A DNA stretch of 64,000 nt, taken from Antechinus flavipes (taxonomy: Eukaryota). Below are positions 4,441 through 58,955 of this stretch, piece after piece. The position numbers and the translations under genes were made by a program. Every line of letters starts with the position of its first letter. Within the stretch, counting starts at the first letter, position 1. The stretch is from assembly GCF_016432865.1 (NCBI RefSeq), contig NC_067401.1, positions 11,904,001-11,968,000 on the forward strand, in the 5' to 3' direction. The notes below the pieces were generated by a model. That model was not told where the DNA came from, did not search any database, and saw only the letters and a program-made list of their open reading frames with translations.

Positions 4441-7400
4441 AGGTATAAGTCCTCACCCCTTGAAACTATCTGACATTTAAATCCATTTTCCTGGATCCCC
4501 TAAATTTTTAAGGTGGCAGTGAACTATTTGAGACATGAGGTGATGGCCCAGAATCTGAAAGATACAAGCTCAAAGTTTTTTCAGATAGCCCCTTAGGGCA
4601 AAAATGGCAGCAGCTCATGGCTCTCCAAGGGCTTATTTTTAAACTTTAAGGTTCTCTTTTCTCTATTTCTTCCCTTCATTCCCCTTTCCTCCCCACCAGT
4701 TAGGGATGGAGGGAAGTTGGAAAGAAAAACTCCTGCTTGGTAGCCACTGGAATCTCCCCAAACTACATGGAAGACAGTCCGCTGTTTGGGGGATTGGAGG
4801 AAAGACTGCTCAATCTCCATCTAGGGAAAACTAAAAAAAAAAAAAAATACACCCTTCTACACACATGAAGACCCCTGGGGAGGATTTTAGAATTTAGGAT
4901 CATGGGGAATGAGGAGATAAGGAGTCCTCATCTCAAGAAAAGTTGTGGGTTGGTATGCAGGGGCCTAGAACCAGTAGCTTTAGGAAAATGGCATACTTCA
5001 GAACCTTGGTTTTGTTTTCCAGGTTTTGCAAAGTCCAGTAATTTTGGAGGGAAATAAGCTGCTGCCAAGGCATGGTGGGCAGGGATCTTTCTAAGGGAGC
5101 CCTAAAGGAGGGTTTAGCTTACCTGACACTGGAGAGATGTCAGAAATACTGAAAGCCACAGGCATTAGCTGGGTCAGGTTGTTTTGTTTCTGCTTTTGCT
5201 TCATTTTTACTGCCAAATAGGAAACTTTACATATATTATTACTGAGTTCTTATTCTTTCATTTAAAAAAAAAAAGTGTTGCTTTAGTGCTTTTTAAATTA
5301 CATCATTGTGATTTCCATCCTACTTTACCCACATACCCATAAAATTGTCCCTTTTAACAGTAATACTGAGCTCAGCAAAACAGATTTATGCAGTGGCTAC
5401 ATCCAGTGGTATATTTATTATTGGGCATCTTTAGCTTTAGGGCTTTCTGATGGAAGGAAGCAGGTTCTCTCTGCATGGTGACTGGTGACCAAGTTTTCAG
5501 GACTCTCCTTGTTCTTTCCATTTACTTTGTTGTTTAACATCAAAGCATTTTAAAGCACAGCTGTTTTTCTATCATGAAGAAGGGCCAGTCCTGTCATCAG
5601 TGTGAGGAGCTCTCGGTGTAGGGAATTCAGAGGGGTCAGTGCTCAGGAAACCGAGCTGCCCCCAATGCAGTTAGATGTTCTGGTGGGTTGATCTGATCTG
5701 GGAGATCTGAGAGGTTCCCTGGCTATGTCAGTAATCACTATTAGGGGCCACACTTCAACTCAGACTTTGTTATTTTTAAGGCCTGACCTTGGGGCTATAT
5801 GGATTGTTGTTTATTAATGAAAATAACCCTTGAACTATATTCTCAGGGCCATGGGGTGTCCATCTGCATCCTTTAGCTCTCTTCCAGAATGATTTTTCCT
5901 ATTTCAGCAATCTGAAACCACTGGTGCAAGTTTCTGTTTATATCTTGCAGTTCTCTCAAAATGTTTACTTTGATTTTTAACTGTGCCCTGATTAAATTGT
6001 TGCCTCTTCCACCAGCTACTGGAGCTCCAGCTGTAGGGTTTTGTGAACACATAGTTTCAAGTCCTTTTTGGGGGGGAGAGACAGTGGGAGGGCAGAGTGG
6101 AGAGGAGACTCTTCATGTGGGGAGCAAGTGTGTGGGAGAGATGAGCTCCCCATCCACAGAAAAGGGCCTTTGTAGGCACCTAAGGGACACTTTGTAGCCA
6201 TGGCTCCTTGTGCTGATAAAACGGAGGGAATTCAGGATGATGCAGAGACAAAGGGGGTAGACAGGTTCTCATGGTGGTGGTGGTGGGAGGGTTCCATTTC
6301 TCTCCCTGCCCCTTGTCTTGTATCTCAAAGTGAGCTCTGCTGTTTCCCTTTCTTTCTCTTTCCCATGAGCTTAGAGAAGCCAGACCAGATCCTAACAGAG
6401 AAGCACTATATGCTAGTGGCCTGTGCTGATCAGGAAATGAAGTCAAGGAAAATCTAAGCAGAGAAGACCCCTCAGCCTTCTGTTGTCCGACTTGATTAGG
6501 TTTTGGTGATGGCTCTGGGTTTGGAATCTGCCATCTTCCTTTGGTTCTGGTCCCTATCTCGGCTCCCAAGACAGGATTGCCTGAAAGATACACGTGAATT
6601 GCTCAAGGTCACAGTCAGTGCGTCAGAGATAGGGTTTGAACGCAGGTCTTCCTGGTACATAGTCCGGATTCAAAGTTGGCCCTTTTCCACCATGGCATAC
6701 TGGATCGGTTCTGGTCTTTCTTGCCCCTCACTTCAGGTCTTCAGAAGCCCTCTGAATTCATCAACAAAACAGCCTGAGTTGGATAATATATGCATTTCTC
6801 CCCACCCAGGGTCCTCTACCCTCTCCTAGGAAGGGGCAGAGACCCATGGAGTGGCCCATTCCACGTGACATCCTAGATAATCTTAAAAATCCCTTCCCCA
6901 AAGCATGAGGAGCAGAATTGGTTTTCTCTGTCCCAGTCACTACTGCTATTGTAATATAAGGACCAAGTCTTTACTGCTTGTTGAGAGCCATCAACTGGCA
7001 TTAGAGTCGAGGTTTTTGTGAGTTCTTTCTCCATTGGATTTGTCTGCATCCTCAGGGTTATTATACTTGGTAACTTATGCCAGCATTTGGGATGGATTCT
7101 TGTGTGTTTGTTTAAAGATATTGCTTTTAAAGCTTCCCTTCCTGGCTTGTGCTCTGTTTACCGGGGTCTATTATACTTTGAGGGGCTGTTTCTAGAAGAT
7201 GAATTATTCTGAGAGCATTTCTCTTGGTCATCTTCCTTGAACATCAGAACCTAAAACCTGGAATACAAGGATATTATTCCTAAGAGAAGGGACATGGCAT
7301 AATTGCTGAAGTGGAGGAAATTTCTTTGGATTTTGATGTTGGAACTTGAATTCATATCAGGGCTTCGGTGCATTTGTGATCTTTCTAATGGGCCCTTTCT

Positions 7401-9127: not shown

Positions 9128-9305
9128 TTTCTATTCCCAGCACCTAGCACAGTGCCTTGCATATAATAGTTGCGTAAATTTTGCTGTACTGTCAAATAGC
9201 ACCTTTCAGAAGACTTGGGAGCATCCTTGTTTTCAACAGCTGTACTATCCTTGTGATGAGGTCAGGATAGCAATAGATAGAAATAAAGGATAGAAATAAA
9301 CATGT

Positions 9306-9483
9306 AGGGGGCAGCGAGGTGGCGCAGTGGATAGAGCACAGGACCTGAGTTCAAATGTGGCCTCAGATACTTAACACTTCCTAGCTGTGTGACCCTAGGC
9401 AATTTGCTTTTAACCCCAGTTGCCTCAGCAAACCAAAAAAAAGAAAAAAGAAAAGGAAAGAAAGAAAAAAAAGAAAAAAAGAA
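9306..9483 (+). mobile_element. WSINE1-like CORE-SINE with TSD
   Basis: A-box 'ggtggcgcagtgg', B-box 'gagttcaaat', core region and A-rich tail. Flanked by the direct repeat agaaataaacat at 9292-9303 and 9484-9495. Confidence 0.85.
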
Positions 9484-13068: not shown

Positions 13069-13217
13069 TTTTTTTTTTTTTATCCTGAGGCATTTAGGGT
13101 TAAGTGACTTGCCCAGAGTCACACAGCTAGGAAGTATTAAGTGTCTGAGGTCAGATTTGAACTCTGGTCCTCCTGACTTCAGGGCTAGTGCTCTATCCAG
13201 TGTGCCATCTAGCTATC
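13069..13217 (-). mobile_element. WSINE1-like SINE
   Basis: Poly-T + 'ttaagtgacttgcccagagtcacacagctaggaagtattaagtgtctgagg...gtgctctatccagtgtgccatctagct'. Confidence 0.85.
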
Positions 13218-18860: not shown

Positions 18861-19538
18861 AGAGCACAAATTGGTGAAAGTTAATTGCTTGTGGTTGAAT
18901 CTTGCCAATAAGACTCAATAAAATGACAAAACTTCCTTAATTAATTTAAAGATTTGGTGTCGTACTCAAACTACCAAAGGATTACTTTATATTACTATAT
19001 AAAATAATAACAATTCAATGGGAAGAATAAAGCTTAAGAATATCAAGGGAAATGGGGGAAAAAACCTAAGGTGAAAATTACAGTTTATGAGAGATTCAGA
19101 GAAACCTAGGAAGAGTTATATGAACAGATACAGAATCAAGAAATCAGAACCCAGGAGGTATTTATGCAGTGACCGCAGCATTTTAGTATTAATCAACTTG
19201 GAAAAAATTAAGAATTCTGATTAGTGCAATGATTGATCAATCAGGACTCGAAAAGACTTAAGATAAAGCACATCTCCCACTTCTCCTAGAACAGTGACCG
19301 TAGGTACAAAATTCATAATCGGACCAATGGAACACATTTGTTTTGTTACAAAAGAGATCTTTATGGAGCTGGGGGTGGGGAAGAAGTTGTCAGAAGGGGA
19401 TTGTCATAAAGATTATTCTCCCTTCTCCCCCACCCCCCTGCCAAGGACAGTAATTGAAACTTTTTTTTAGACTCAGAAAAAAATAAAAGTTCGGAGGGTG
19501 ACACAGTAGCAGAACAATATTGGTATTACCATGTTAAA

Positions 19539-19544
19539 TTTAAT
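19539..19544 (-). terminator. candidate polyadenylation signal ATTAAA of the ADAM retrogene
   Basis: Plus-strand tttaat gives ATTAAA ~150 nt after the stop, followed on the minus strand by GU/U-rich sequence (tattgttctgctactgtgtc; ttttattttttt). Confidence 0.45.
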
Positions 19545-19695
19545 TTGTGTATATATATTTGAAACAAGAAAGAAAAACAGGAAAAAAGTGGCTCTGGGAT
19601 ACTGGACATCAGGCAGGGGGGCCAGCAGCTTAAGGCAGCCCAGGGTAGCCCGATGCCAAGTGTGACTGAGATTCCTAACACTTTCCCTCCTGTAA

Positions 19696-22215
19696 CTATT
19701 TCTGGGCGGGGGCTTCCTCTGTGACCGGCTTCCTTCCCATTTTCCACTTGTAGAAGATAAATAGCAGGATGGCGATGGCCACCACCAGGGTCAGGGACAC
19801 CAGCAGGGCCACCAGCACGTTCTTGACCCTTACGTGGAGCGGGACATTGATCCTGCGGGCCAGATTGAGCCTGTCTGCGTCCAGCAGGTCCTCCCTGAGC
19901 ATGGGGAGCTTCTTCTGGCAGTCCGGGGGCGCCCAGCCGGGGTCGCAGTGGCACTCGCGCTTGTGGTCGCAGACGCCCCGCTGGTGGCACTTCTGGGAGC
20001 AGTTCTTGGCGCCGTAGACGCTGAGGTCCTGGCAGCTGCTGTGGAAGCACACCTTCTTGTTGTCGCACTTGGTGCCCGTGGCCACCGTCACGAAGGGCTG
20101 GTGGTACTCGCTCTGGGTGATGGCCAGGTCGCAGCGCTGCTCCTCCAGGAGGAAGCTGCACAGGTGCCGCAGCGTGGGCCGGATGTGGCTGGGCCGGGAG
20201 CAGAACAGGTGGCCGCACATGTCGAGGCCCTTCCGGGAGGGGTAGAAGGCCTCGGTGCAGCCCTTGGCCAGCTTGAGCAGGAAGCACTTGTCCTTGGCCA
20301 CGTCGGCGCCCACGCCCCAGAGGGCCTGGCACTGCTGCGAGTAGGTGGGGCAGGTGCCGTTGTAGCAGTAGCCCTGCCAGCAGGGGGTGCCGTTCTCCTT
20401 GTACACGTTCTCGGGACACTTGGCCTGCTTGCCGTCGCAGTACTCGGCCAGGTCGCAGGCGCTCTGCGCCTCCCGGCAGACCTCGCCGGCCTGCAGCACC
20501 TGGCACGCCTGGCAGCACTCGCCCTCGGTGCACTCGGCGCCCGCCGCCAGCCGGCAGCTCTTGGCGTTGCAGCACTGGTTGGAGCACTCCTCCGGGAAGC
20601 CGCAGTCGCACTCCTCCCCCTTTTCCAAAAACTTGTTCCCACACACGGGCTTCTCCTCCAGCGTCTCCAGCACGGGGAAGTTGTTGAGGCAGCTCGAGGA
20701 GAAGATGTTCCCTCCGAGGAACTTCTGCAGGTTGTACTTGCTGCAGCTGCTGAACTTCTTGGGGAGCAGGGTGCCCGACTTGGAGGTCATGACGCAGCCG
20801 CCGTTCTGCGCGTTGTCGCACTGGCAGTCCTTGATGTTTTCGTCGTGGTCCATGCCCAGGTTGTGGCCCATCTCGTGAGCCAGCGTGGTGGCCACCCCGA
20901 AGGCGTTGGCGCTGAAGTCCTGGCTCACGCCGCCCGAGCCCTCGGTGCACATGGAGGCCAGCCTGGCCAGCCCCATGGCGGCGCCCCCGAAGCTGACCCC
21001 CGAGATGAGCTGCGCGTTGTCGTGCTGCTTCTTCCGGACCAGGTCCTTGACCCGCCACTTGAGGAAGCTGGACAGCGTGGTCTCGATGTTGGTGTCCACC
21101 GGGGCCTTGTTGCCTTTGTCCCAGATCTCCAAGCCGGTCAGAACCACCCGGAAGTTGATCTCCTGATAAAGCCGGTCCACGTGGTTGATGATCTCCTTCA
21201 CCCGCTGGCGCATCTTCTTGAGGCTGTTGTACTTCTTGTACTCCACGTTGTCCACCACCACGAAGAGCTCCACGTAGTGCGTGTCCTTCGGGGCGGAGCC
21301 CGGGATCCAGTTCTGGGGCAAAGGCACGGCCGCCATCATGGTCTCCAGCTCCCCTTTGAGGCTGACCTTGCCCACGGCGCAAGTCTTTTTTTTCTCCTTG
21401 AGGTCTTGCTGCCTGTAGATGGCGTGCTTGCCCTGGTCGCTCCGGTGCCGCTTCTCGTTGCCCACGTACCGGCCCTGGGCGCTGCTGCTCCTCTGCTGAC
21501 TCTCCGTGGTGCCGGGGCTCTCCGGACCGGTGCCCTGTCGCTCTCGGGTGCTGCCCTGCGTGGTCTCGGTGGTGCCCGGGCTTTTGTGGGCCCTGCCGGG
21601 TTTCTCCTGCTGCCGCTCGTAGCCCTGGTCGGTGCCGTTGCTGCGTCTCTTGGGAGAGCTGTCATGGCGCCCCTGGATGACGCCGTGTTGTCCCTGGGCG
21701 CCGCCCCGTCCCTCCTGGGAACTGCCGTGGTTCTCGTGGTCCAGGGGCTCGATCAGATGGACGGTGGAGCCGGTCTTGAAGAAGCCCCGGATCCCTCGGC
21801 AGATGCTGATGCTGGCCACGGAGCTCTGGTGCCCTTCCACGTGGCCCTGGTAGAAGCAGGGCTGCCCCGCCTGCGGCTTCTCGGTCACCTCGGTGCCATT
21901 GGCCAGGGTGTGGGTCTCCGTGTAGTCGGACCCCACCAGGTGCCGGTTCCTGCGGAGGAGGAGGGTGAAGTTGTTGCCCCTCAGGCCGAGGAGGTAGCGG
22001 ATGGTCTCGGGATACAGAGTTGGGCTTGAAGAGAGTTCGTTCAGGGCTCCCGAGATGGGTAACCGGAGAGGCTGGACCACTTCGTACCGCTCCACATGGG
22101 GAAGGCGGCCCGTGGGCAGGGGAGGGGGCGCCGAGAAGCCCCGGCACTCCCTGAGAATCCTTCCCAGGCAGAGGAGGAGGAGACAGCCCCAGAAGCAGCG
22201 GCCACCGGGAAGCAT
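19696..22215 (-). CDS. ADAM8-like: intronless ADAM8-like disintegrin and metalloproteinase (probable functional retrogene), 839 aa
   Basis: Single uninterrupted ORF: signal peptide; prodomain (YEVVQPLRLP, NFTL, YTETHTLANGTEVTE, CFYQGHVEG); cysteine switch (KTCAV); reprolysin domain with HEMGHNLGMDH (aa 447-457, nt 20845-20877) and Met-turn CVM; disintegrin, Cys-rich and EGF-like domains; TM helix aa ~800-822; short tail. The motifs HEMGHNLGMDHDEN, QxINFRVVLxGLEIW and GYCYNGxCPT, and the N-glycosylation sites NFT/NGT/NCS, match ADAM8 specifically as I recall it. ATG has A at -3. Confidence 0.95.
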   Translation of the reverse strand: MLPGGRCFWGCLLLLCLGRILRECRGFSAPPPLPTGRLPHVERYEVVQPLRLPISGALNELSSSPTLYPETIRYLLGLRGNNFTLLLRRNRHLVGSDYTETHTLANGTEVTEKPQAGQPCFYQGHVEGHQSSVASISICRGIRGFFKTGSTVHLIEPLDHENHGSSQEGRGGAQGQHGVIQGRHDSSPKRRSNGTDQGYERQQEKPGRAHKSPGTTETTQGSTRERQGTGPESPGTTESQQRSSSAQGRYVGNEKRHRSDQGKHAIYRQQDLKEKKKTCAVGKVSLKGELETMMAAVPLPQNWIPGSAPKDTHYVELFVVVDNVEYKKYNSLKKMRQRVKEIINHVDRLYQEINFRVVLTGLEIWDKGNKAPVDTNIETTLSSFLKWRVKDLVRKKQHDNAQLISGVSFGGAAMGLARLASMCTEGSGGVSQDFSANAFGVATTLAHEMGHNLGMDHDENIKDCQCDNAQNGGCVMTSKSGTLLPKKFSSCSKYNLQKFLGGNIFSSSCLNNFPVLETLEEKPVCGNKFLEKGEECDCGFPEECSNQCCNAKSCRLAAGAECTEGECCQACQVLQAGEVCREAQSACDLAEYCDGKQAKCPENVYKENGTPCWQGYCYNGTCPTYSQQCQALWGVGADVAKDKCFLLKLAKGCTEAFYPSRKGLDMCGHLFCSRPSHIRPTLRHLCSFLLEEQRCDLAITQSEYHQPFVTVATGTKCDNKKVCFHSSCQDLSVYGAKNCSQKCHQRGVCDHKRECHCDPGWAPPDCQKKLPMLREDLLDADRLNLARRINVPLHVRVKNVLVALLVSLTLVVAIAILLFIFYKWKMGRKPVTEEAPAQK

Positions 22216-22364
22216 GCTGGAGAGCGGACAGCGTCTGCCCCCTCCCGGGGAGGAGGACCTTCAGTCAGCGGGGCTCCACCACCTGCTGGGCAGGGATGTG
22301 GCCGGGAGGGGCATGCTGTGCCCAGCTCCCGTGTCTCTGCCTGGGCCTCCGGACCCCTCATCCC

Positions 22365-22387
22365 CTCCCGCCCCGGCAGTGACGTCA
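22365..22387 (-). promoter_or_regulatory. GC box + perfect CRE upstream of the ADAM retrogene
   Basis: TGACGTCA at 22380-22387 and GGGGCGGGAG (minus strand) at 22365-22374, 150-172 nt upstream of the ATG. Confidence 0.6.
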
Positions 22388-22589
22388 CAAAGGGCTTTCC
22401 ACCTAACAGTCCTGTGAGGGGCCCGGCCCTTCTTCTGCTCGCCCGACTGGTGCCCAATGTCTCCCCAGTTCTGAGGAACAAAGTGGGTGCCGTCCTCCCC
22501 TGGTGCACCGAGCAGGCCTCTGTAAATCCTGGGATCAGTTAGATGCCCTTGTTTTTCCTCAGTGCTATTCCAGCCTTCCAAACGTGTGC

Positions 22590-24299: not shown

Positions 24300-24640
24300 C
24301 TGATGTTGTAACTTGTTTCAATCCTGTACTTCTTAGGGTTTTCTTGGCAAAGATATTGAAGTGATTAGCCATTTCCTTCTCCAGCTCATTTTACAGATGA
24401 GGAAACTGAGGCACACAGGGTAAAGTGACTTACCCAGGGTCACCCAGCTAGGAAAGTCTGAGGTTGGATTTGGTTTTTTTGTTTTGTTTTATTTTTTTCC
24501 TGAGGCAATGGGGTTAAATTTATTTGCCCAGGGTCACATAGTTAGGAAGTCTTAAGTGTTGGAGACCAGATGTGAACTCGGGTCCTCCTGACTTCAGGGC
24601 TGGTGCTCTATCTACTGTACCACCTAGCTGCCCCCCCCCA
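24300..24640 (-). mobile_element. Mar1-like SINE followed by WSINE1-like SINE
   Basis: 'gggttttcttggcaaagatatt...gccatttccttctccagctcattttacagatgaggaaactgagg' then poly-T + '...gtgctctatctactgtaccacctagctgcccc'. Confidence 0.8.
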
Positions 24641-25293
24641 GGTATTAATATGTTTGTGATTATTTTATGCGTCTATATCCATCGCCCTCCCCTCCCCTTC
24701 CTTAGAATGGAAGCTTGCTGAGGACAGCTTTTATTTTTTTTTTTTATGTTTTTATGTTTTAATTTTTGTCCGTATGTCTGGTGTCTAGCACACAGAGCCT
24801 GATGAGTAGCTGGAACAAAATTAAAACTTAAATTAAATTTAATTGTTTTTCCTGGTAGTAATAAGGAATCACAGAAGAAGAGGGAGATGGTATGATTTGT
24901 GTCTTGGGAAGATCAGTTTGGCAGCTGTGGAGCAAAGAGTTAGGGAAGAAGGCAGAGGTCAAAGAATAAATAACCTGAACTAGAAGAGTGGGCTGGATCC
25001 ATCAGCATGGAGGGTGGGACGGAACCCCAAGAGGGATATTGTGGAGGTAGAATCAACCATCAGAGGTTGGCAACCAACTAGCAGGAGGGTTGAAGGTGAA
25101 AGAAGAGACAAGTGGCTGATAAACCATTTTAGAACTGGAAGGGACTGTAGTTCAGCCACCACTGGTGATAGTTTCTAAGGGAAAAGCAGCCATGATTGGA
25201 GAAATTGGTTGGGGAAAAGATATTGCTTTCTGTTTTGGGGACATCCTAGCAGAGGAGATGGAAATCTGCCAATAAGCATCTGGGCTGCCACAT

Positions 25294-28200
25294 TTTTTTT
25301 AAAATAACTTTTTATTGACAGAACCCATGCCAGGGTAATTTTTTTACAGCATTATCCCTTGCACTCACTTCTGTTCCGATTTTTCCCCTCCCTCCCTCCA
25401 CCCCCTCCTCCAAATGGCAAGCAGTCTTATACATGTTAAATAGGTTACAGTATATCCTAGATACAATATATATGTGCAGAACCGAACAGTTTTCTTGTTA
25501 CACAGGGAGAATTGGATTCAGAAGGTAGAAATAACCCGAGAAGAAAAACAGAAATGCAAGCAGTTTATTTATATTCATTTCCCAGTGTCCTTTCTTTGGG
25601 TGTAGCTGCTTCTATCCATCCTTGATCAATTGAAACTGAATTAGCTCTCTTTATCGAAGAGATCCACTTCCATCAGAATACATCCTCAAACAGTATTGTT
25701 GTTGAGGTATATAATGATCTCCTGGTTCTGCTCATTTCACTCAGCATCAGTTCATGTAAGTCTCGCCAGTCCTCTCTGTATTCATCCTGCTGGTCATTTC
25801 TTACAGAACAATAATATTCCATAACGTTCATATACCACAATTTACTCAACCATTCTCCATTGATGGGCATCCATTCATTTTCCAGCTTTTGGCACATACA
25901 GGTCCCTTTCCCTTCTTTAGTATCTCTTCGGGGTATAAGCCCAGTAGAAACACTGCTGGATCAAAGGGGATGCACAGTTTGATAACTTTTTGAGCATAGT
26001 TCTAAATCACTCTCCAGAATGGCTGGATGTGTTCACAATTCCACCAACAATGTATCAGTGTCCCTCATGCCCTCCAACATTCCGCATTATCTTTCCCTGT
26101 CATTCTAGCCAATCTGACAGGTGTGTAGTGATATCTCAGAGTTATCTTAATTTGCATTTCTCTGATTAATAATGATTTGGAGCATATTTTCATATGTCTA
26201 TAAATAGTTTCAATTTCTTCATCTGAGAATTGTCTGTTCATATCCTTTGACCATTTATCAATTGGAGAATGGCTTGCTTTCTTATAAATTAGAGTCAGTT
26301 CTCTATATATTTTGGAAATGAGGCCTTTATCAGAACCTTTGACTGTAAAAATGTTTTCCCAGTTTATTGTTTCCCTTCTAATCTTGTCTGCATTTATTTT
26401 GTTTGTACAAAAACTTTTCAATTTGATATAATCAAAATTTTCTATTTTGTGGTCATTAGTTATCTCTAGTTCTTCTTTGGTCATAAATTCCTCCCTCTTC
26501 CACAGGTCTGAGAGGTAAATTATCCTATGCTCTTCCAATTTATTTATAATCTCATTCTTTTTTTTTCCCCCTCTGGCAGAATTATGTTTTACTCTGGAGT
26601 TCCAGAGATTCTTTTTTTTTTTATTTTAATATCTTTTTATTGATAAAACGCATGCCAGGGTAATTTTTTACAGCATTATCCCTTGCACTCACTTCTGTTC
26701 CGATTTTTCCCCTCCCTCCCTCCACCCCTTCCCCCAGATGGCAAGCAGTCCTTTACATGTTGAATAGGTTACAGTATATTCTGGATACAATATATGTGTG
26801 CAGAACCAAACAGTTTTCTTGTTGCACAGGGAGAATTGAATTTAGAAGGTGTAAATAATCCGGGAAGAAAAACAAAAATGCAAGCAGTTTATATTCATTT
26901 CCCAGTGTCCTTTCTTTGGGTGTAGCTGCTTCTATCCATCCTTGATCGATTGAAACTGAATTAGCTCTCTTTATCGAAGAGATCCACTTCCATCAGAATA
27001 CATCCTCAAACAGTATCGTTGTTGAGGTATATAATGATCTCCTGGTTCTGCTCATTTCACTCAGCATCAGTTCATGTAAGTCTCGCCAGTCCTCTCTGTA
27101 TTCATCCTGCTGGTCATTCCTTACAGAACAATAATATTCCATAACATTCATATACCACAATTTACTCAACCATTCTCCAATTGATGGACATCCATTCATT
27201 TTCCAGCTTCTAGCCACTACAAACAGGGCTGCCACAAACATTTTGGCACATACAGGTCCCTTTCCCTTCTTTAGTATCTCTTTGGGGTATAAGCCCAGTA
27301 GAAACACTGCTGGATCAAAGGGTATGCACAGTTTGATAACTTTTTGAGCATAGTTCCAAATTGCTCTCCAAAATGGCTGGATGTGTTCACAATTCCACCA
27401 ACAATGTATCAGTGTCCCTGTTTTCCCACATCCCCTCCAACATTCCCCATTATCTTTCCCTGTCATTCTAGCCAATCTGACAGGTGTGTAGTGGTATCTC
27501 AGAGTTGTCTTAATTTGCATTTCTCTGATTAATAATGATTTGGAGCATATTTTCATATGTCTATAAATAGTTTCAATTTCTTCATCTGAGAATTGTCTGT
27601 TCATATCCTTTGACCATTTATCAATTGGAGAATGGTTTGATTTCTTATAGATTAGAGTCAATTCTCTATATATTTTGGAAATGAGGCCTTTATCAGAACC
27701 TTTGATTGTAAAAATGTTTTCCCAGTTTATTGTTTCCCTTCTAATCTTGTTTGCATTTGTTTGTTTGTACAAAAACTTTTCAATTTGATATAATCAAAAT
27801 TTTCTATGTTGTGGTCAGTAGTGATCTCTAGTTCTTCTTTGGTCATAAATTCCTCCCTGTTCCACAGGTCTGCGAGGTAAACTATCCTATGCTCTTCCAA
27901 TTTATTTATAAATTCATTCTTTATGCCTAGGTCATGAACCCATTTTGACCTTATTTTGGTGTACGGTGTTAAGTGTGGGTCAATGCCTAGTTTCTGCCAT
28001 GCTGATTTCCAATTTTCCTAGCAATTTTTGTCAAATAATGTGTTCTTATCCCAAAAACTGGAGTCTTTGGGTTTGTCAAACACTAGATTATTAAAATTAT
28101 TGGCTGTTTTGTCCTTTGAAATGTTGGAGTTCAAATGTTGGAATTCTTGTTCTTCTCAAAACACAGCTGGTTTAGCTTAGAGCCCTCCGAATATCTCCAA

Positions 28201-35277: not shown

Positions 35278-35417
35278 GGAGGCAGCTAGGTGGTGCAGTG
35301 GATAGAGCACCAGCCCTGAACTCAGAGGACTTGAGTTCAAATTTGATCTCAGACACTTAATACGTCTTGGTTGTGTGACCTTGGGCAAGTCACTTACCCC
35401 CAGTTGCCTCAGAAAAA
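35278..35417 (+). mobile_element. WSINE1-like SINE
   Basis: 'ggcagctaggtggtgcagtggatagagcaccagccctg...gagttcaaat...ttgggcaagtcactt...gcctcagaaaaa'. Confidence 0.85.
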
Positions 35418-41638: not shown

Positions 41639-41954
41639 NNNNNNNNNNNNNNNNNNNNNNNNNNNNNNNNNNNNNNNNNNNNNNNNNNNNNNNNNNNNNN
41701 NNNNNNNNNNNNNNNNNNNNNNNNNNNNNNNNNNNNNNNNNNNNNNNNNNNNNNNNNNNNNNNNNNNNNNNNNNNNNNNNNNNNNNNNNNNNNNNNNNNN
41801 NNNNNNNNNNNNNNNNNNNNNNNNNNNNNNNNNNNNNNNNNNNNNNNNNNNNNNNNNNNNNNNNNNNNNNNNNNNNNNNNNNNNNNNNNNNNNNNNNNNN
41901 NNNNNNNNNNNNNNNNNNNNNNNNNNNNNNNNNNNNNNNNNNNNNNNNNNNNNN
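41639..41954. other. assembly gap (316 N)
   Basis: Run of N. Confidence 1.
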
Positions 41955-48099: not shown

Positions 48100-49400
48100 C
48101 CAACACACTCACCCAGGCGCGCGCGTGCGCGCGCACATCCATACACACACACGGGCGCACGCAGGCGCGCGCGCGCGCACTCCCACTCCCGTGCGCGCTG
48201 CCAGATTCTGTCATCGCCCTGTGTCAGAAGCCCTGTGGCACAAGCCTGATTGGCGGGCTTTGTTTATTCTGTACCCAGATTCCTCGTCCCGGCAGGCAGG
48301 CCACGGCGGAGGGCCGCTGATTGGCCGCTCCTCCTGGCGGACCCTCCCTCCCTCCCTCTCTCTCGCGTGGCACACGGCACAGCCAGGGCTGCGCGGAATC
48401 CTAAAGCGGCCCGATTTACATCCATTCATGAATCCGTGACGTCAGCCCCGGCTGGGGCTCCTTTGCAGTGGGCTGGCTGGAGGACCGCGGGGGTGCAGGT
48501 CCCCGGCTTCGGCCTTCCACCGTGCCCGGCCGCCGGCCTTCCATCTTCTCCGCAGCCCGAAAATGGAGCGGCGTGTGTAGGAATCCCTCCCGGCCGTGAG
48601 TATTTCGTGGGCTTTCTCCGTCCCGCTCGCATCTGCCTTTATTCCGCGGGGCCAGATGGCTGGCCGGCTGGGGCGTGCGCGCCCGCCAGGCTCCGGAGGC
48701 TGGGCGCAGGGACGCGGCTCCGGGAGAGGAGCCGCGCTCCCCGAGCCCGCTGACAGCTGCTCTGCCTCTGCCCGTCTGCGTGCTCGCCGTGGACATTTCT
48801 CCTTTCCCATCCCGCACGTTATCCCCTGACGCTGCCCCTGCAGTCCCGAGTCGGGGCTGAACTTCCCCGAGCCCGTTCGGGTCTGTGGAGGGCATCGGGG
48901 GCAAAGCCCCGGCCGGCGCTGGGGAGCCGGCAGCCTGCAACCTGGCCGATGGTCTCCCTTCCTTCCCCAGCCTTCCCTTCGGGATCCGCTTGCGTTTCGG
49001 AGAAGATGGGGGCTGCTCCTAGGAGCTTGCTTTCCGGGTCTGGAGAGGAAGCCACTGGCATCTCTTTGCTTCTTCTGGCCGTCGATTTTACTTAAATTTG
49101 GATGGAAAAAACGGGAAAGCTTAAAGTTCAATCAGAAAGCGCAGGGAAAGGGGGGGGGGGCAGCCCTGTGAGTGATAACCAGCGCCTACTGTCCCCGGGA
49201 AAAGCTAGCGAGGCGGTGGGCTCGGGTCCTGAATTATCGCAAGTCGAGCCGTCCCCAAAAGGCATGATGTTTCTCTTTCTGGTAGAAGCTGGGGCGGCAA
49301 GAAGGCTTTCGGATCTGTTCTTTTATTGGCAGCTTTCTGTGTGCTTCAGTTCAGAAGCTTTTCTCCGAGGATCTTAGGTGCCCAGGGCTATTTAAAGTGG
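48100..49400. promoter_or_regulatory. CpG-island promoter of an unidentified gene
   Basis: CpG-dense. Two CTGATTGG NF-Y sites (ATTGG at 48249 and 48320), a perfect CRE TGACGTCA at 48437-48444, and a YY1-like AAAATGG at 48560. Confidence 0.8.
48450..48595 (+). other. probable non-coding first exon (TSS approximate)
   Basis: Lies just downstream of the CRE and ends at a good donor CC|GTGAGTA (48596); contains only a 5-codon ORF, MERRV*. Confidence 0.45.
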
Positions 49401-57800: not shown

Positions 57801-58324
57801 AAAACTATTGGGTGCTTGTTATATTCGATTTAAATACGAGGAGACTTTTACATATTCCCAAAGAGGATTCCCATGAGAGAAGTAGCATAAGATTTGTGAA
57901 GGACATGAGTGACCAGAAAAAGAGACAAACAGAAAGAGGGAAGGCGAGAGAGGAGGAGAAGGGGGAAAAGAAGGAGAAAAAAAATGAGAATAGATAGACA
58001 TCCTAAGTATGCCTTGGTATCCACAAAAAGATCATAAGGTGGAGGGAAAAGATCTCCCATAGATCCTTTGTGGGAGATTTAAAAAGCCCTAAATCAGAAA
58101 TCTAGAAGGCCTGGCTGGGCCTTAACTGTTTTAGCAATAATAAAACTCAAAATATTGGGTTCTTAACTGCCTTTACCTTCCTGTTTATTAAATAATTTTT
58201 AAAAATAAATAAATATTCCTACTTTTTAGTTTTCCAAATAATCTGATATTTAGTATAAGTTTGTCTAAAAGAAAAAAAAAAAAACACGAGTAACTGTTCG
58301 TTACTCGTTACTGTTAAAAAGTAA

Positions 58325-58955
58325 ATTATCTGAGGACATATAGGTGACACAGTGGACAGAGGACCATCCCTGAAGTCAGGAATTCGAATCTGAACTCAGA
58401 CACTTAACATTTCCTAGCTGTGTGTCCCTGGGCAAGTCACTTAACGCCAATCATTTTTCCTGGCTCTGTATACCTAAGGAATTTCTGTTAATTCCTTTTT
58501 TTCATGACTTTTTTTCAAAAGTTGTCAGTTAACATGATTCTTTTAAAAATTTCATAATAAGTTGGAAACAACTAACAAAAGCAAACAAAATAAATAGAAA
58601 GAAATTTTAAAACCCAACACGACTATATAATCAGGACTACTGATCATAACAATATAATTTAACTAATAGCAATAACAAAAAAAAAAAAGAAAAGAAAAAA
58701 TAAAAATAAAATAAAATAAAAACTAATAGCAATAACAACCATTCTGTATCTATCCTCTTGTGATCACATTTTTATCCATTTCCATCTGTTTACTGGGAAC
58801 ATTTGCAAATATATATAGGCAAGACAGTTGGGATAAAGTGACTTGTTCAAGTCACACACCTAGTAAATGTTAGCTGTCCAAGACCAGATCTGAACTCAGG
58901 TTCTTCTGACTCCAGGGCTGGTGCTCTATCCATTTCACCATCCAGCTGCCCTTGC
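58325..58955. mobile_element. two WSINE1-like copies (+ at ~58325-58450, - at ~58810-58955)
   Basis: Diagnostic head and core sequences in opposite orientations. Confidence 0.7.

What the first reader, a model, noticed from the sequence alone, without database searches (positions are those of the whole stretch)
19696..22215. Intact intronless ADAM8-derived retrogene, an apparently unusual marsupial metalloprotease
Seen: 2.5 kb of uninterrupted ORF with all ADAM domains, an intact catalytic HExxHxxGxxH motif and conserved cysteines, despite heavy divergence elsewhere. Known: ADAM8 is a gene of more than 20 exons. The well-known intronless mammalian ADAMs (ADAM20/21/29/30 group) are ADAM9-related testis genes, and I do not recall an ADAM8-derived one in eutherians. 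Inference: an old retrocopy (no clear poly-A or TSD left) kept by selection and remodelled, plausibly male-germline expressed.
Basis: partly seen in the sequence, partly recalled or inferred. Interest (0 to 1): 0.85.

Follow-up and report, generated by a model that had tools for sequence, protein, structure and literature searches.

The report
Marsupial intronless ADAM8-derived protease gene
This is an intact, intron-free copy of the immune-cell protease gene ADAM8, made from an mRNA in an early marsupial and kept by selection in opossums and Australasian marsupials; databases list it only as "ADAM8-like", and the one systematic ADAM survey apparently used it as the opossum's ADAM8.

Summary
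Window 19696-22215 (-) is one 839-aa ORF. It has a signal peptide, prodomain with cysteine switch, a reprolysin domain with an intact HEMGHNLGMDHD zinc site and Met-turn, disintegrin, Cys-rich and EGF modules, and a TM helix.

- The ORF nests inside mammalian ADAM8 as sister to canonical marsupial ADAM8 (100/99 support). An origin before the marsupial/eutherian split is rejected (AU p=0.0065).
- It runs uninterrupted across about 19 parental intron positions.
- Intronless orthologues sit at the syntenic site in Sarcophilus and Dromiciops. The Monodelphis, Gracilinanus and Trichosurus models have gene spans that leave little or no room for introns.
- Multi-exon ADAM8 persists elsewhere in Antechinus and Dromiciops.
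- dN/dS is 0.19 against Dromiciops, about 0.1 in the protease and disintegrin domains. All 42 invariant ADAM8 cysteines are kept.

The copy is remodelled. It has a roughly 100-aa disordered prodomain insert, and the proline-rich cytoplasmic tail is cut to 17 aa. The Cys-rich and stalk regions evolve fast within dasyurids. GC3 is 92.5% in a 34-44% GC neighbourhood.

A second intronless paralogue without a TM exists in other marsupials. Testis expression is untested.

The gene is auto-annotated as "ADAM8-like". The 2015 ADAM survey listed its Monodelphis orthologue's accession as opossum ADAM8 and reported no such retrocopy. I rate it a new member of a known kind, of moderate interest.

The parts
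19696..22215 (-). Complete single-exon CDS of the ADAM8-derived retrogene (839 codons plus stop)
   Evidence: ORF. Full ADAM domain set. Single tblastn HSPs to the orthologous loci in Dromiciops and Sarcophilus.
22138..22215 (-). Predicted signal peptide (about aa 1-26, hydrophobic core CFWGCLLLLCLG)
   Evidence: Read from the sequence; helix 6-24 in the model; conserved in clade A orthologues. The cleavage site is inferred.
21433..21738 (-). Lineage-variable, disordered Gly/Gln/Ser/Thr/His-rich insert in the prodomain, about 20 aa upstream of the cysteine switch
   Evidence: Absent from canonical ADAM8 (tblastn break; alignment). Length varies among orthologues and is hugely expanded as heptad repeats in Trichosurus. 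pLDDT is about 30. dN/dS is 0.4 to 1.1. No DNA-level tandem repeat is left here.
21379..21381 (-). Cysteine-switch codon (C279; local motif TCAVG, where the other intact orthologues (Sarcophilus, Dromiciops, Trichosurus, Gracilinanus, Monodelphis) and canonical ADAM8 have CGV)
   Evidence: Alignment; motif scan; the A280G difference from Sarcophilus.
20674..21279 (-). Reprolysin-type metalloprotease domain (aa 313-514)
   Evidence: Pfam PF01421, E 1.5e-62. The model superposes on the solved human ADAM8 catalytic domain 4dd8 with TM 0.94-0.95 and rmsd 1.6-1.7 A. dN/dS is 0.12 against Dromiciops and 0.06 against Sarcophilus.
20842..20877 (-). Zinc-binding catalytic motif HEMGHNLGMDHD (aa 447-458); the Met-turn CVM follows at aa 474-476
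   Evidence: The HEMGHNLGM(D/N)HD motif keeps its three zinc histidines and catalytic glutamate in the full-length clade A and B proteins and the canonical ADAM8 shown (Trichosurus A has N at the tenth position; the partial Vombatus model has HEIGH).
20407..20625 (-). Disintegrin domain (aa 531-603); the integrin-loop position reads AQSACD
   Evidence: Pfam PF00200; alignment; dN/dS 0.07-0.10.
20011..20394 (-). Cysteine-rich domain including the hypervariable region (aa 608-735), fast-evolving within dasyurids
   Evidence: Pfam PF08516. Window versus Sarcophilus gives 13.5 non-synonymous and 2.5 synonymous differences. Pooled with the stalk/TM/tail and contrasted with the protease plus disintegrin domains, Fisher p is 1e-7.
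19918..20001 (-). EGF-like module (aa 739-766)
   Evidence: Weak Pfam EGF_2 match, 19.9 bits, just under the cut-off. All six cysteines are conserved.
19750..19818 (-). Transmembrane helix (aa 800-822)
   Evidence: Hydrophobic run in the sequence; helix 797-826 in the model; aligned with the TM of canonical ADAM8.
19699..19749 (-). 17-aa cytoplasmic stub; the ~135-aa proline-rich tail of ADAM8 is missing
   Evidence: Alignment. Clade A tails are 14-27 aa in all species with a full model.
22216..22425 (-). Conserved GC-rich upstream block (putative core promoter and 5'UTR), with a palindromic CRE TGACGTCA at 22380-22387 and an E-box
   Evidence: About 85% identical to Dromiciops over ~210 bp, against synonymous divergence dS 0.85. 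GC 63-71%. A function as promoter is inferred.
19505..19560 (-). Conserved 3'UTR block holding an ATTAAA polyadenylation signal (19539-19544) followed by a GT-rich element
   Evidence: About 55 nt are nearly identical (one C/T difference) in the window, Sarcophilus and Dromiciops. Use as the poly(A) site is inferred.

Best explanation
The stretch is a functional retrogene. An ADAM8 mRNA was reverse-transcribed and inserted on the marsupial stem lineage, after the split from eutherians and before opossums and Australasian marsupials diverged. It has been kept as a protein-coding gene ever since. It encodes a type-I membrane zinc metalloprotease with the whole ADAM8 ectodomain (shown). I infer that the protein is made as a zymogen latched by the prodomain cysteine switch, is activated without furin as ADAM8 is, and then cleaves cell-surface or matrix proteins. 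Compared with its parent it has three differences. It has lost the SH3-binding cytoplasmic tail through which ADAM8 signals, so it should act as a protease and adhesion module only. It carries a variable disordered insert just before the cysteine switch, which may change how it is activated. Its substrate-targeting Cys-rich and stalk region evolves quickly. Transcription probably starts from a conserved GC-rich promoter about 100-200 bp upstream of the ATG and ends at a conserved ATTAAA signal about 150 nt after the stop. The tissue of expression is unknown.
For: Identity and origin:
- The best hits are marsupial 'ADAM8-like' proteins, then canonical marsupial ADAM8, then eutherian ADAM8.
- The ML tree puts clade A (this gene) plus clade B at 100/100, sister to canonical marsupial ADAM8. 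The marsupial group has 100/99 support, inside mammalian and vertebrate ADAM8, with ADAM28/12/19/33/15 as outgroups.
- The AU test rejects an origin before the therian split, p=0.0065.

Processed copy:
- Parental ADAM8 has at least 20 coding exons over 22-24 kb.
- In the window, blocks homologous to successive parental exons abut directly.
- About 19 intron positions are spanned by one ORF.

Orthology:
- The window is collinear with the Sarcophilus locus at 87-92% identity and with the Dromiciops locus.
- The ORF is a single HSP in both.
- The Monodelphis gene span of 2805 bp equals 935 codons exactly.
- Gracilinanus has 2958 bp for 939 aa, and Trichosurus 4186 bp for 1109 aa.

Selection:
- dN/dS is 0.19 (CI 0.15-0.24) against Dromiciops, with protease 0.12, disintegrin 0.10 and EGF 0.06.
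- All 42 of 42 invariant cysteines and 197 of 238 invariant ADAM8 columns are kept.

Catalytic competence:
- The zinc motif and Met-turn are intact.
- The modelled protease domain matches solved ADAM8 (4dd8) at TM 0.95.

Transcript signals:
- Upstream and 3'UTR blocks are conserved more than synonymous sites.
- GC3 is 92.5% against 85.5% in the Antechinus parent and 34-44% GC in the flanks. This fits the reported rise of synonymous GC in functional, but not dead, retrocopies (PMC7181179).

ADAM8 biochemistry used for the inference (autocatalytic prodomain removal, multimerisation, tail-dependent signalling) comes from PMC9995898.
Against: - There is no expression or protein evidence of any kind. 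No transcript-derived fragments of this clade turned up, and no paper mentions it.
- No poly(A) tail remnant or target-site duplication can be tied to the insertion.
- No UTR homology to the parent is detectable, so retroposition rests on the loss of all introns and the new location.
- The window species has Ala instead of the otherwise conserved Gly after the switch cysteine.
- The disintegrin domain is poorly modelled, pLDDT 33-45.
- Within dasyurids overall dN/dS is 0.51, and it is above 1 in the Cys-rich and stalk parts. That could be relaxation rather than adaptation. With GC3 near 100%, dS may be depressed, which would inflate these ratios.
- The koala, wallaby and bilby orthologues were not seen in the searches, and the wombat model is partial, so retention may not be universal.
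Confidence: 0.85

Rival explanations
1. It is a dead processed pseudogene whose reading frame is open by chance, helped by the GC-rich composition that makes stop codons rare.
For: GC3 of 92.5% does create long spurious ORFs in other frames of the same stretch. There is no expression evidence.
Against: The frame is open in seven species across four marsupial orders. dN/dS is 0.19 overall and about 0.1 in the catalytic and disintegrin domains. All 42 invariant cysteines and the zinc site are kept. The Dromiciops orthologue keeps the frame at only 69% GC3.
Confidence: 0.02
2. It is a DNA-level (segmental) duplicate of ADAM8 that later lost its introns, not a retrocopy.
For: No poly(A) remnant, TSD or parental UTR homology survives.
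Against: About 19 introns are all missing, with exact exon-exon joins. No orthologue examined at DNA level or by gene span leaves room for a parental intron. The copy lies on another chromosome from the parent in Dromiciops. No flanking homology to the parental locus was found.
Confidence: 0.03
3. The protein is made but works mainly as a non-proteolytic adhesion or decoy molecule, for instance one permanently latched by its enlarged prodomain, like the catalytically inactive ADAMs.
For: The prodomain is enlarged next to the cysteine switch. The tail is lost. The disintegrin and EGF modules are at least as constrained as the protease domain.
Against: The zinc motif, catalytic Glu and Met-turn are conserved across clade A, allowing D/N at the tenth motif position in Trichosurus and M/I at the third in the partial Vombatus model. 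Protease-domain dN/dS is 0.06-0.12. Inactive ADAMs usually lose these residues (general knowledge of the family; PMC9995898).
Confidence: 0.08
4. On where it acts: it is a testis or sperm gene like the ADAM9-derived intronless ADAMs, rather than a myeloid or immune gene like its parent.
For: Many retrogenes are first expressed in testis (PMC4550289). There is a palindromic CRE in the conserved upstream block. The Cys-rich and stalk regions evolve fast, as is common for reproductive or immune surface proteins.
Against: No expression data. CRE sites are common in CpG-rich promoters and are not tissue-diagnostic, and in Dromiciops the site reads TGAGGTCA. The whole CDS behaves as a CpG island (o/e 0.67), which says only that it is probably unmethylated in the germline.
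Confidence: 0.35

Closest known systems
ADAM8 (CD156a), the canonical multi-exon gene next to TUBGCP2
   Same: It shares the whole ectodomain architecture, the zinc site and the cysteine framework. It has 53-57% protein identity to marsupial ADAM8, and its protease-domain fold matches 4dd8. It has no furin-type RX(K/R)R site near the prodomain/protease boundary. The only such motif, RRNR at aa 88, lies in the prodomain core.
   Different: It has no introns and sits at a different locus. A prodomain insert of about 100 aa has been added. The proline-rich SH3-ligand tail is replaced by a 17-aa stub. The disintegrin loop reads AQS rather than the KD-type loops of the human and rat sequences in the alignment (human KDM, rat KDK). 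GC3 is even higher than in the parent.
Group I testicular ADAMs (ADAM1, 4, 6, 20, 21, 24-26, 29, 30 and others), intronless genes derived from ADAM9/9-like
   Same: They are intronless ADAM genes thought to have arisen by retroposition, which later duplicated and were retained for tens of millions of years (PMC4550289).
   Different: The parent is different: ADAM8, a 'somatic' ADAM, as shown by nesting inside mammalian ADAM8. This gene is marsupial-specific, and its expression site is unknown.
Opossum Adam9b, a young ADAM9 retrocopy (PMC4550289)
   Same: A marsupial retrocopy of a somatic ADAM.
   Different: Adam9b is ~99% identical to its parent, keeps a poly(A) tract and is frameshifted by an ERV insertion, so it is a pseudogene. 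The gene here is ancient, intact and under purifying selection.
Clade B 'ADAM8-like' paralogue (Sarcophilus L002:10001-12058; Trichosurus P0007)
   Same: It is intronless and sister to clade A at 100/100. It shares a short insert at the same prodomain position and about 35 nt upstream of the ATG.
   Different: It has 685 aa and ends after the EGF module with no TM, so it is predicted to be secreted. It is on another chromosome from A in Trichosurus and in Sarcophilus. GC3 is only 51%. The Sarcophilus copy has lost 4 of the 42 invariant cysteines.

Membership tests
ADAM / adamalysin (MEROPS M12B) membrane metalloprotease-disintegrins | Domain order: propeptide, reprolysin, disintegrin, Cys-rich, EGF-like, TM | tested here: met
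   Pfam hits in that order. TM helix 797-826 in the model. EGF_2 is just under its cut-off, but all six cysteines are present.
ADAM / adamalysin (MEROPS M12B) membrane metalloprotease-disintegrins | Catalytic consensus HExxHxxGxxHD plus Met-turn (active subclass) | tested here: met
   HEMGHNLGMDHD at 447-458 and CVM at 474. Enzymatic activity itself was not tested.
ADAM / adamalysin (MEROPS M12B) membrane metalloprotease-disintegrins | Prodomain cysteine switch | tested here: met
   C279 aligns with the TCGV switch of ADAM8. The window has CAV.
ADAM8 subfamily (as paralogue derived from ADAM8) | Phylogenetic nesting within the ADAM8 clade, to the exclusion of other ADAMs | tested here: met
   (100/99 with marsupial ADAM8; mammalian ADAM8 100/99). 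The alternative placement is rejected by the AU test. ADAM9 and the testicular ADAMs were not in the tree.
ADAM8 orthologue (the gene ADAM8 itself) | Conserved multi-exon structure and position next to TUBGCP2 | tested here: not met
It is single-exon. The Dromiciops orthologue is on another chromosome from the true ADAM8, with an EHHADH-like gene (ECH/3HCDH domains) about 83 kb downstream.
ADAM8 orthologue (the gene ADAM8 itself) | Long proline-rich cytoplasmic tail with SH3-ligand motifs | tested here: not met
   The tail is 17 aa with no proline-rich motif. The feature is described in PMC9995898.
Functional retrogene | Lacks all introns of a multi-exon parent, with exact exon-exon joins | tested here: met
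Functional retrogene | Located away from the parent | tested here: met
   Different chromosomes in Dromiciops. The window flanks share nothing with the Antechinus ADAM8 locus except repeats.
Functional retrogene | Poly(A) tract and target-site duplications | tested here: inconclusive
   A short A-run about 225 nt after the stop is shared by three species, but it cannot be tied to the parental 3' end. No TSD was found. This is expected for an insertion older than the marsupial crown.
Functional retrogene | Intact ORF in several lineages and dN/dS well below 1 | tested here: met
Functional retrogene | Transcribed and translated | not testable with these tools
   There are only indirect signs: conserved upstream and poly(A)-signal blocks and high GC3.

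The most novel reading that the evidence does not exclude
Marsupials evolved their own pair of ADAM8-derived, mRNA-born proteases: a membrane-bound, tail-less form (this gene) and a secreted form. The substrate-recognition region of this gene is under recurrent positive selection because it acts at a conflict interface, such as sperm-egg interaction, pouch-young or mucosal immunity, or pathogen contact. Its near-saturated GC3 is maintained by selection for expression of an unspliced mRNA. That would make it a natural test case both for lineage-specific sheddases and for the 'intronless genes need GC' hypothesis.
Probability: 0.25. Interest if true: 0.65.

Novelty: new member of a known kind. 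Interest (0 to 1): 0.45.

Why it matters
First, it corrects the record on ADAM family evolution. The only systematic survey states that all mammals have a single Adam8 and that no somatic ADAM other than Adam9 was retroposed in the opossum (PMC4550289). Its accession for 'opossum ADAM8' (XP_007486259.1) belongs to the record whose current version is the intronless clade A orthologue, so paralogue and orthologue appear to have been conflated.

Second, it gives marsupial biology one, probably two, lineage-specific and probably active cell-surface or secreted proteases derived from an immune-cell sheddase. The signalling tail is removed and the targeting region evolves fast. These are candidates for marsupial-specific immune or reproductive functions.

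Third, a CDS with 92-100% GC at third positions, embedded in 34-44% GC DNA, has a sister copy that has drifted to 51% and is losing cysteines. This is a clean natural contrast for the debate over why functional retrogenes are GC-rich.

Tried and rejected
- Expression evidence: a domain-sized protein search meant to catch short transcript-derived fragments found no marsupial clade A fragments. Exact-protein contig look-ups for the Ensembl Sarcophilus model and the older Monodelphis record found nothing. So nothing can be said about expression.
- Literature: no paper holds 'ADAM8-like' or the accessions. Searches pairing ADAM8 with retrogene, marsupial, opossum or marsupial species names found only the 2015 ADAM-family survey, and the listed marsupial papers do not mention ADAM8. 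The retrogene catalogues I could open hold no ADAM entry.
- Parental UTR homology, poly(A) and TSD: blastn with word size 7 against both parental loci found only CDS homology.
- DNA-level tandem repeat in the prodomain insert: none is left in this species.
- The bacterial-type promoter/terminator scan is irrelevant to a mammalian gene and was empty.
- Rfam scan of the window: empty.
- Pfam on ten other long ORFs of the window: no domains, so the neighbouring genes were not identified.
- DNA of the Gracilinanus, Trichosurus and Monodelphis orthologues could not be fetched because the files were too large. Intronlessness there rests on gene span against protein length, and codon analyses are limited to three species.
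- Rejected: ADAM28/SVMP affinity, suggested by the top full-length PDB hits. That ranking arises because only the catalytic domain of ADAM8 has been solved. The tree settles the question.
Full report
OBSERVATION

The minus strand of window 19696-22215 holds one ATG-to-stop ORF of 839 codons. Pfam places, in order, the M12B propeptide, a full reprolysin domain (E 1.5e-62), a disintegrin domain, the ADAM Cys-rich domain and a weak EGF-like match. The zinc motif HEMGHNLGMDHD (aa 447-458), the Met-turn (CVM, 474) and the prodomain switch cysteine (C279) are present. All 42 cysteine columns that are invariant across 23 canonical ADAM8 proteins are retained here and in all five other full-length orthologues.

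An AlphaFold model built on a 35-sequence alignment is confident for the prodomain core and the protease domain (pLDDT 80-96). It predicts a C-terminal TM helix (797-826).

WHICH ADAM

A search of 5.8 billion proteins returns, in order:
- a Sarcophilus protein of 843 aa (89% identity);
- 'ADAM8-like' proteins of Trichosurus, Dromiciops, Gracilinanus, Monodelphis and Vombatus (58-74%);
- a second 'ADAM8-like' type of 685 aa in Trichosurus and Sarcophilus (about 60%);
- canonical marsupial ADAM8 (49-57%);
- eutherian, sauropsid and amphibian ADAM8.

I named outgroups through cluster look-ups (ADAM28, 12, 19, 33, 15 and a lamprey protein) and built an IQ-TREE LG+C20 tree of 42 rows.
- This gene and its orthologues (clade A) form a group whose internal order mirrors the marsupial tree, with didelphids against Australidelphia.
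- Clade A joins the 685-aa type (clade B) at 100/100.
- A+B is sister to canonical marsupial ADAM8 (marsupial group 100/99), inside mammalian ADAM8 (100/99).
- Sauropsid, amphibian and fish ADAM8 lie outside.

Forcing canonical marsupial and eutherian ADAM8 together, which corresponds to an origin before the therian split, costs 19.4 log-likelihood units and is rejected (AU p=0.0065). That group was named after I had seen the tree. So the copy arose on the marsupial stem, after the split from eutherians and before the marsupial crown.

RETROCOPY

- Canonical ADAM8 spans 21.9 kb in Antechinus flavipes and 24.3 kb in Dromiciops, with at least 20 coding exons.
- At nucleotide level the window's blocks of homology to successive parental exons abut each other directly.
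- About 19 parental intron positions fall inside the single ORF.
- In Dromiciops the intronless copy and the multi-exon ADAM8 are on different chromosomes.
- The window is collinear over its length with the Sarcophilus locus (87-92% identity) and, in conserved blocks, with the Dromiciops locus. In both, the ORF is one uninterrupted tblastn HSP.
- The Monodelphis gene spans 2805 bp for 934 aa, exactly 935 codons. Gracilinanus has 2958 bp for 939 aa and Trichosurus 4186 bp for 1109 aa.
- No poly(A) remnant, TSD or parental UTR homology can be shown, as expected at this age.
I did not verify the species. It fits the roughly 10% divergence from Sarcophilus.
- The window's exact protein is not in the 15-billion-protein collection.

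SELECTION

Nei-Gojobori estimates with bootstrap intervals:

Against Dromiciops:
- overall dN/dS 0.19 (0.15-0.24; dS 0.85);
- protease 0.12;
- disintegrin 0.10;
- EGF 0.06;
- Cys-rich 0.22;
- prodomain insert 0.40;
- stalk/TM/tail 0.30.

Against Sarcophilus (dS 0.097) the picture is sharply heterogeneous:
- protease plus disintegrin: 5 non-synonymous and 20 synonymous differences;
- Cys-rich plus stalk/TM/tail: about 30 non-synonymous and about 4.5 synonymous (Fisher p=1e-7).

The catalytic core is therefore strongly constrained. The half of the ectodomain that in ADAMs holds the hypervariable, substrate-targeting region is changing fast. Ratios above 1 there are not significant on their own, and they may be inflated because dS is depressed at near-saturated GC3.

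REMODELLING

1. A roughly 102-aa Gly/Gln/Ser/Thr/His-rich insert (window 21433-21738) lies about 20 aa before the cysteine switch. It is absent from ADAM8 and present as a stub in clade B. Its length varies in clade A and is expanded into dozens of heptad repeats in Trichosurus. It is modelled as disordered. NCBI's Dromiciops model splices it out as a false intron.
2. The roughly 135-aa proline-rich tail of ADAM8 is replaced by 14-27 residues in every clade A protein, 17 here. In ADAM8 that tail carries SH3-ligand motifs and is needed for integrin/ERK signalling, while the prodomain is removed autocatalytically after multimerisation (PMC9995898).
3. The window species alone has Ala for Gly after the switch cysteine.

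COMPOSITION AND TRANSCRIPT SIGNALS

- The CDS is 65% GC with GC3 92.5%, reaching 100% over codons 601-700, and CpG o/e 0.67. The flanks are 34-44% GC with CpG o/e 0.12-0.30.
- GC3 of the Sarcophilus orthologue is 93.5%, of Dromiciops 68.6%, and of the Sarcophilus clade B paralogue 51.5%. The parents are 85.5% (Antechinus) and 68.8% (Dromiciops).
- Where both dasyurids differ from Dromiciops at synonymous third positions, 126 sites are G/C in dasyurids against 7 the other way.
- The GC island starts about 300 bp upstream of the ATG and collapses within 100-200 bp after the stop.
- This matches the published pattern that functional, but not dead, retrocopies are GC-richer than their parents despite AT-richer surroundings (PMC7181179). 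I cannot separate selection from local biased gene conversion.
- About 210 bp upstream of the ATG is roughly 85% conserved with Dromiciops, more than synonymous sites. It holds a palindromic CRE (22380-22387; TGAGGTCA in Dromiciops) and an E-box.
- A 3'UTR block of about 55 nt with ATTAAA (19539-19544) is nearly identical (one C/T difference) in the three species.
- I read these as a core promoter and a poly(A) site. That is inference.

WHAT IS KNOWN

Databases already carry the gene under automatic names, 'ADAM8-like' or 'ADAM metallopeptidase domain 8'. I found no paper describing it.

The 2015 survey of vertebrate Adam genes states that a single Adam8 was found in all mammals examined. [quoted passage not shown] Its Table S1 lists XP_007486259.1 as 'Opossum ADAM8'. 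XP_007486259.2 is the intronless clade A protein. An older 934-aa database record differs from it at 2 of 934 residues. The retrogene therefore seems to have stood in for ADAM8 in that study. That version .1 is the same locus is likely but not proven here.

VERDICT

The male-germline idea is untested. The thing is a new, or at least undescribed, member of a known kind: a conserved functional retrogene in the ADAM family. It is notable for its somatic-ADAM parent, its age, its tail loss, a secreted sister copy and its extreme GC3. Interest is moderate.

Noticed in passing
window 19750-22500: The CDS and about 300 bp upstream form a sharply bounded GC/CpG island (GC3 92.5%, 100% over codons 601-700, CpG o/e 0.67) inside 34-44% GC DNA. 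The Dromiciops orthologue has GC3 of only 69% and the Sarcophilus clade B paralogue 51%. At 126 synonymous sites against 7, dasyurids have G/C where Dromiciops has A/T.
   Followed up: partly
window 19834-22029 (+) and the other long ORFs: A 731-aa antisense ORF and several other long ORFs overlap the gene. In the antisense ORF, first codon positions coincide with sense third positions (both coordinates are 1 mod 3), so stop codons are rare. This is a compositional by-product, not a second gene.
   Followed up: yes
window about 48143-48864: A GC-rich block is 92% conserved with Sarcophilus. A GenBank Sarcophilus model (KAM9003121.1) starts there with a 42-aa first exon and splices into codon ~20 of the retrogene at an AG inside the signal-peptide sequence. 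That removes the signal peptide. It is either a prediction artefact or a recruited 5' exon or promoter; Pfam finds nothing in the ORFs there.
   Followed up: partly
L002:10001-12058 (Sarcophilus) and P0007 (Trichosurus): There is a second intronless ADAM8-like paralogue (clade B, 685 aa). It ends after the EGF module with no TM, so it is predicted to be secreted, and it is on a different chromosome from clade A. The Sarcophilus copy has lost 4 of the 42 invariant cysteines (three Cys-to-Tyr changes) and has GC3 of 51%, so it may be decaying.
   Followed up: partly
L001:10001-93136 (Dromiciops, NCBI model P0003): The annotation splices out the prodomain repeat as a false intron and joins the ORF to exons about 80 kb downstream, giving a spurious C-terminus. 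The uninterrupted ORF of 845 aa is at L001:10001-12538. An EHHADH-like gene (ECH/3HCDH domains) lies at about L001:96065.
   Followed up: yes
P0021 (Monodelphis canonical ADAM8), disintegrin loop: The canonical opossum ADAM8 reads RGD at the disintegrin loop (CREARGDCD), where the human and rat sequences in the alignment have KD-type loops and the other marsupials QD or RD.
   Followed up: no
window 9305-9454, 13069-13214, 24470-24635, 35281-35417, 58322-58451, 58822-58951: Copies of one SINE-like element of about 145 bp, with dozens of 75-89% identical copies in the Dromiciops locus and others in the Sarcophilus and parental loci. LINE-like segments at 25292-26318 and 26609-27681 are duplicated.
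   Followed up: no
window 41639-41954: A run of 316 N (assembly gap or masked stretch), left untouched.
   Followed up: no
window 5270-7129: A 1.9-kb non-coding block is about 70% conserved with Dromiciops (L001:33266-35204), the longest conserved flank block. No Pfam domain was found in its only long ORF (6180-6593).
   Followed up: no
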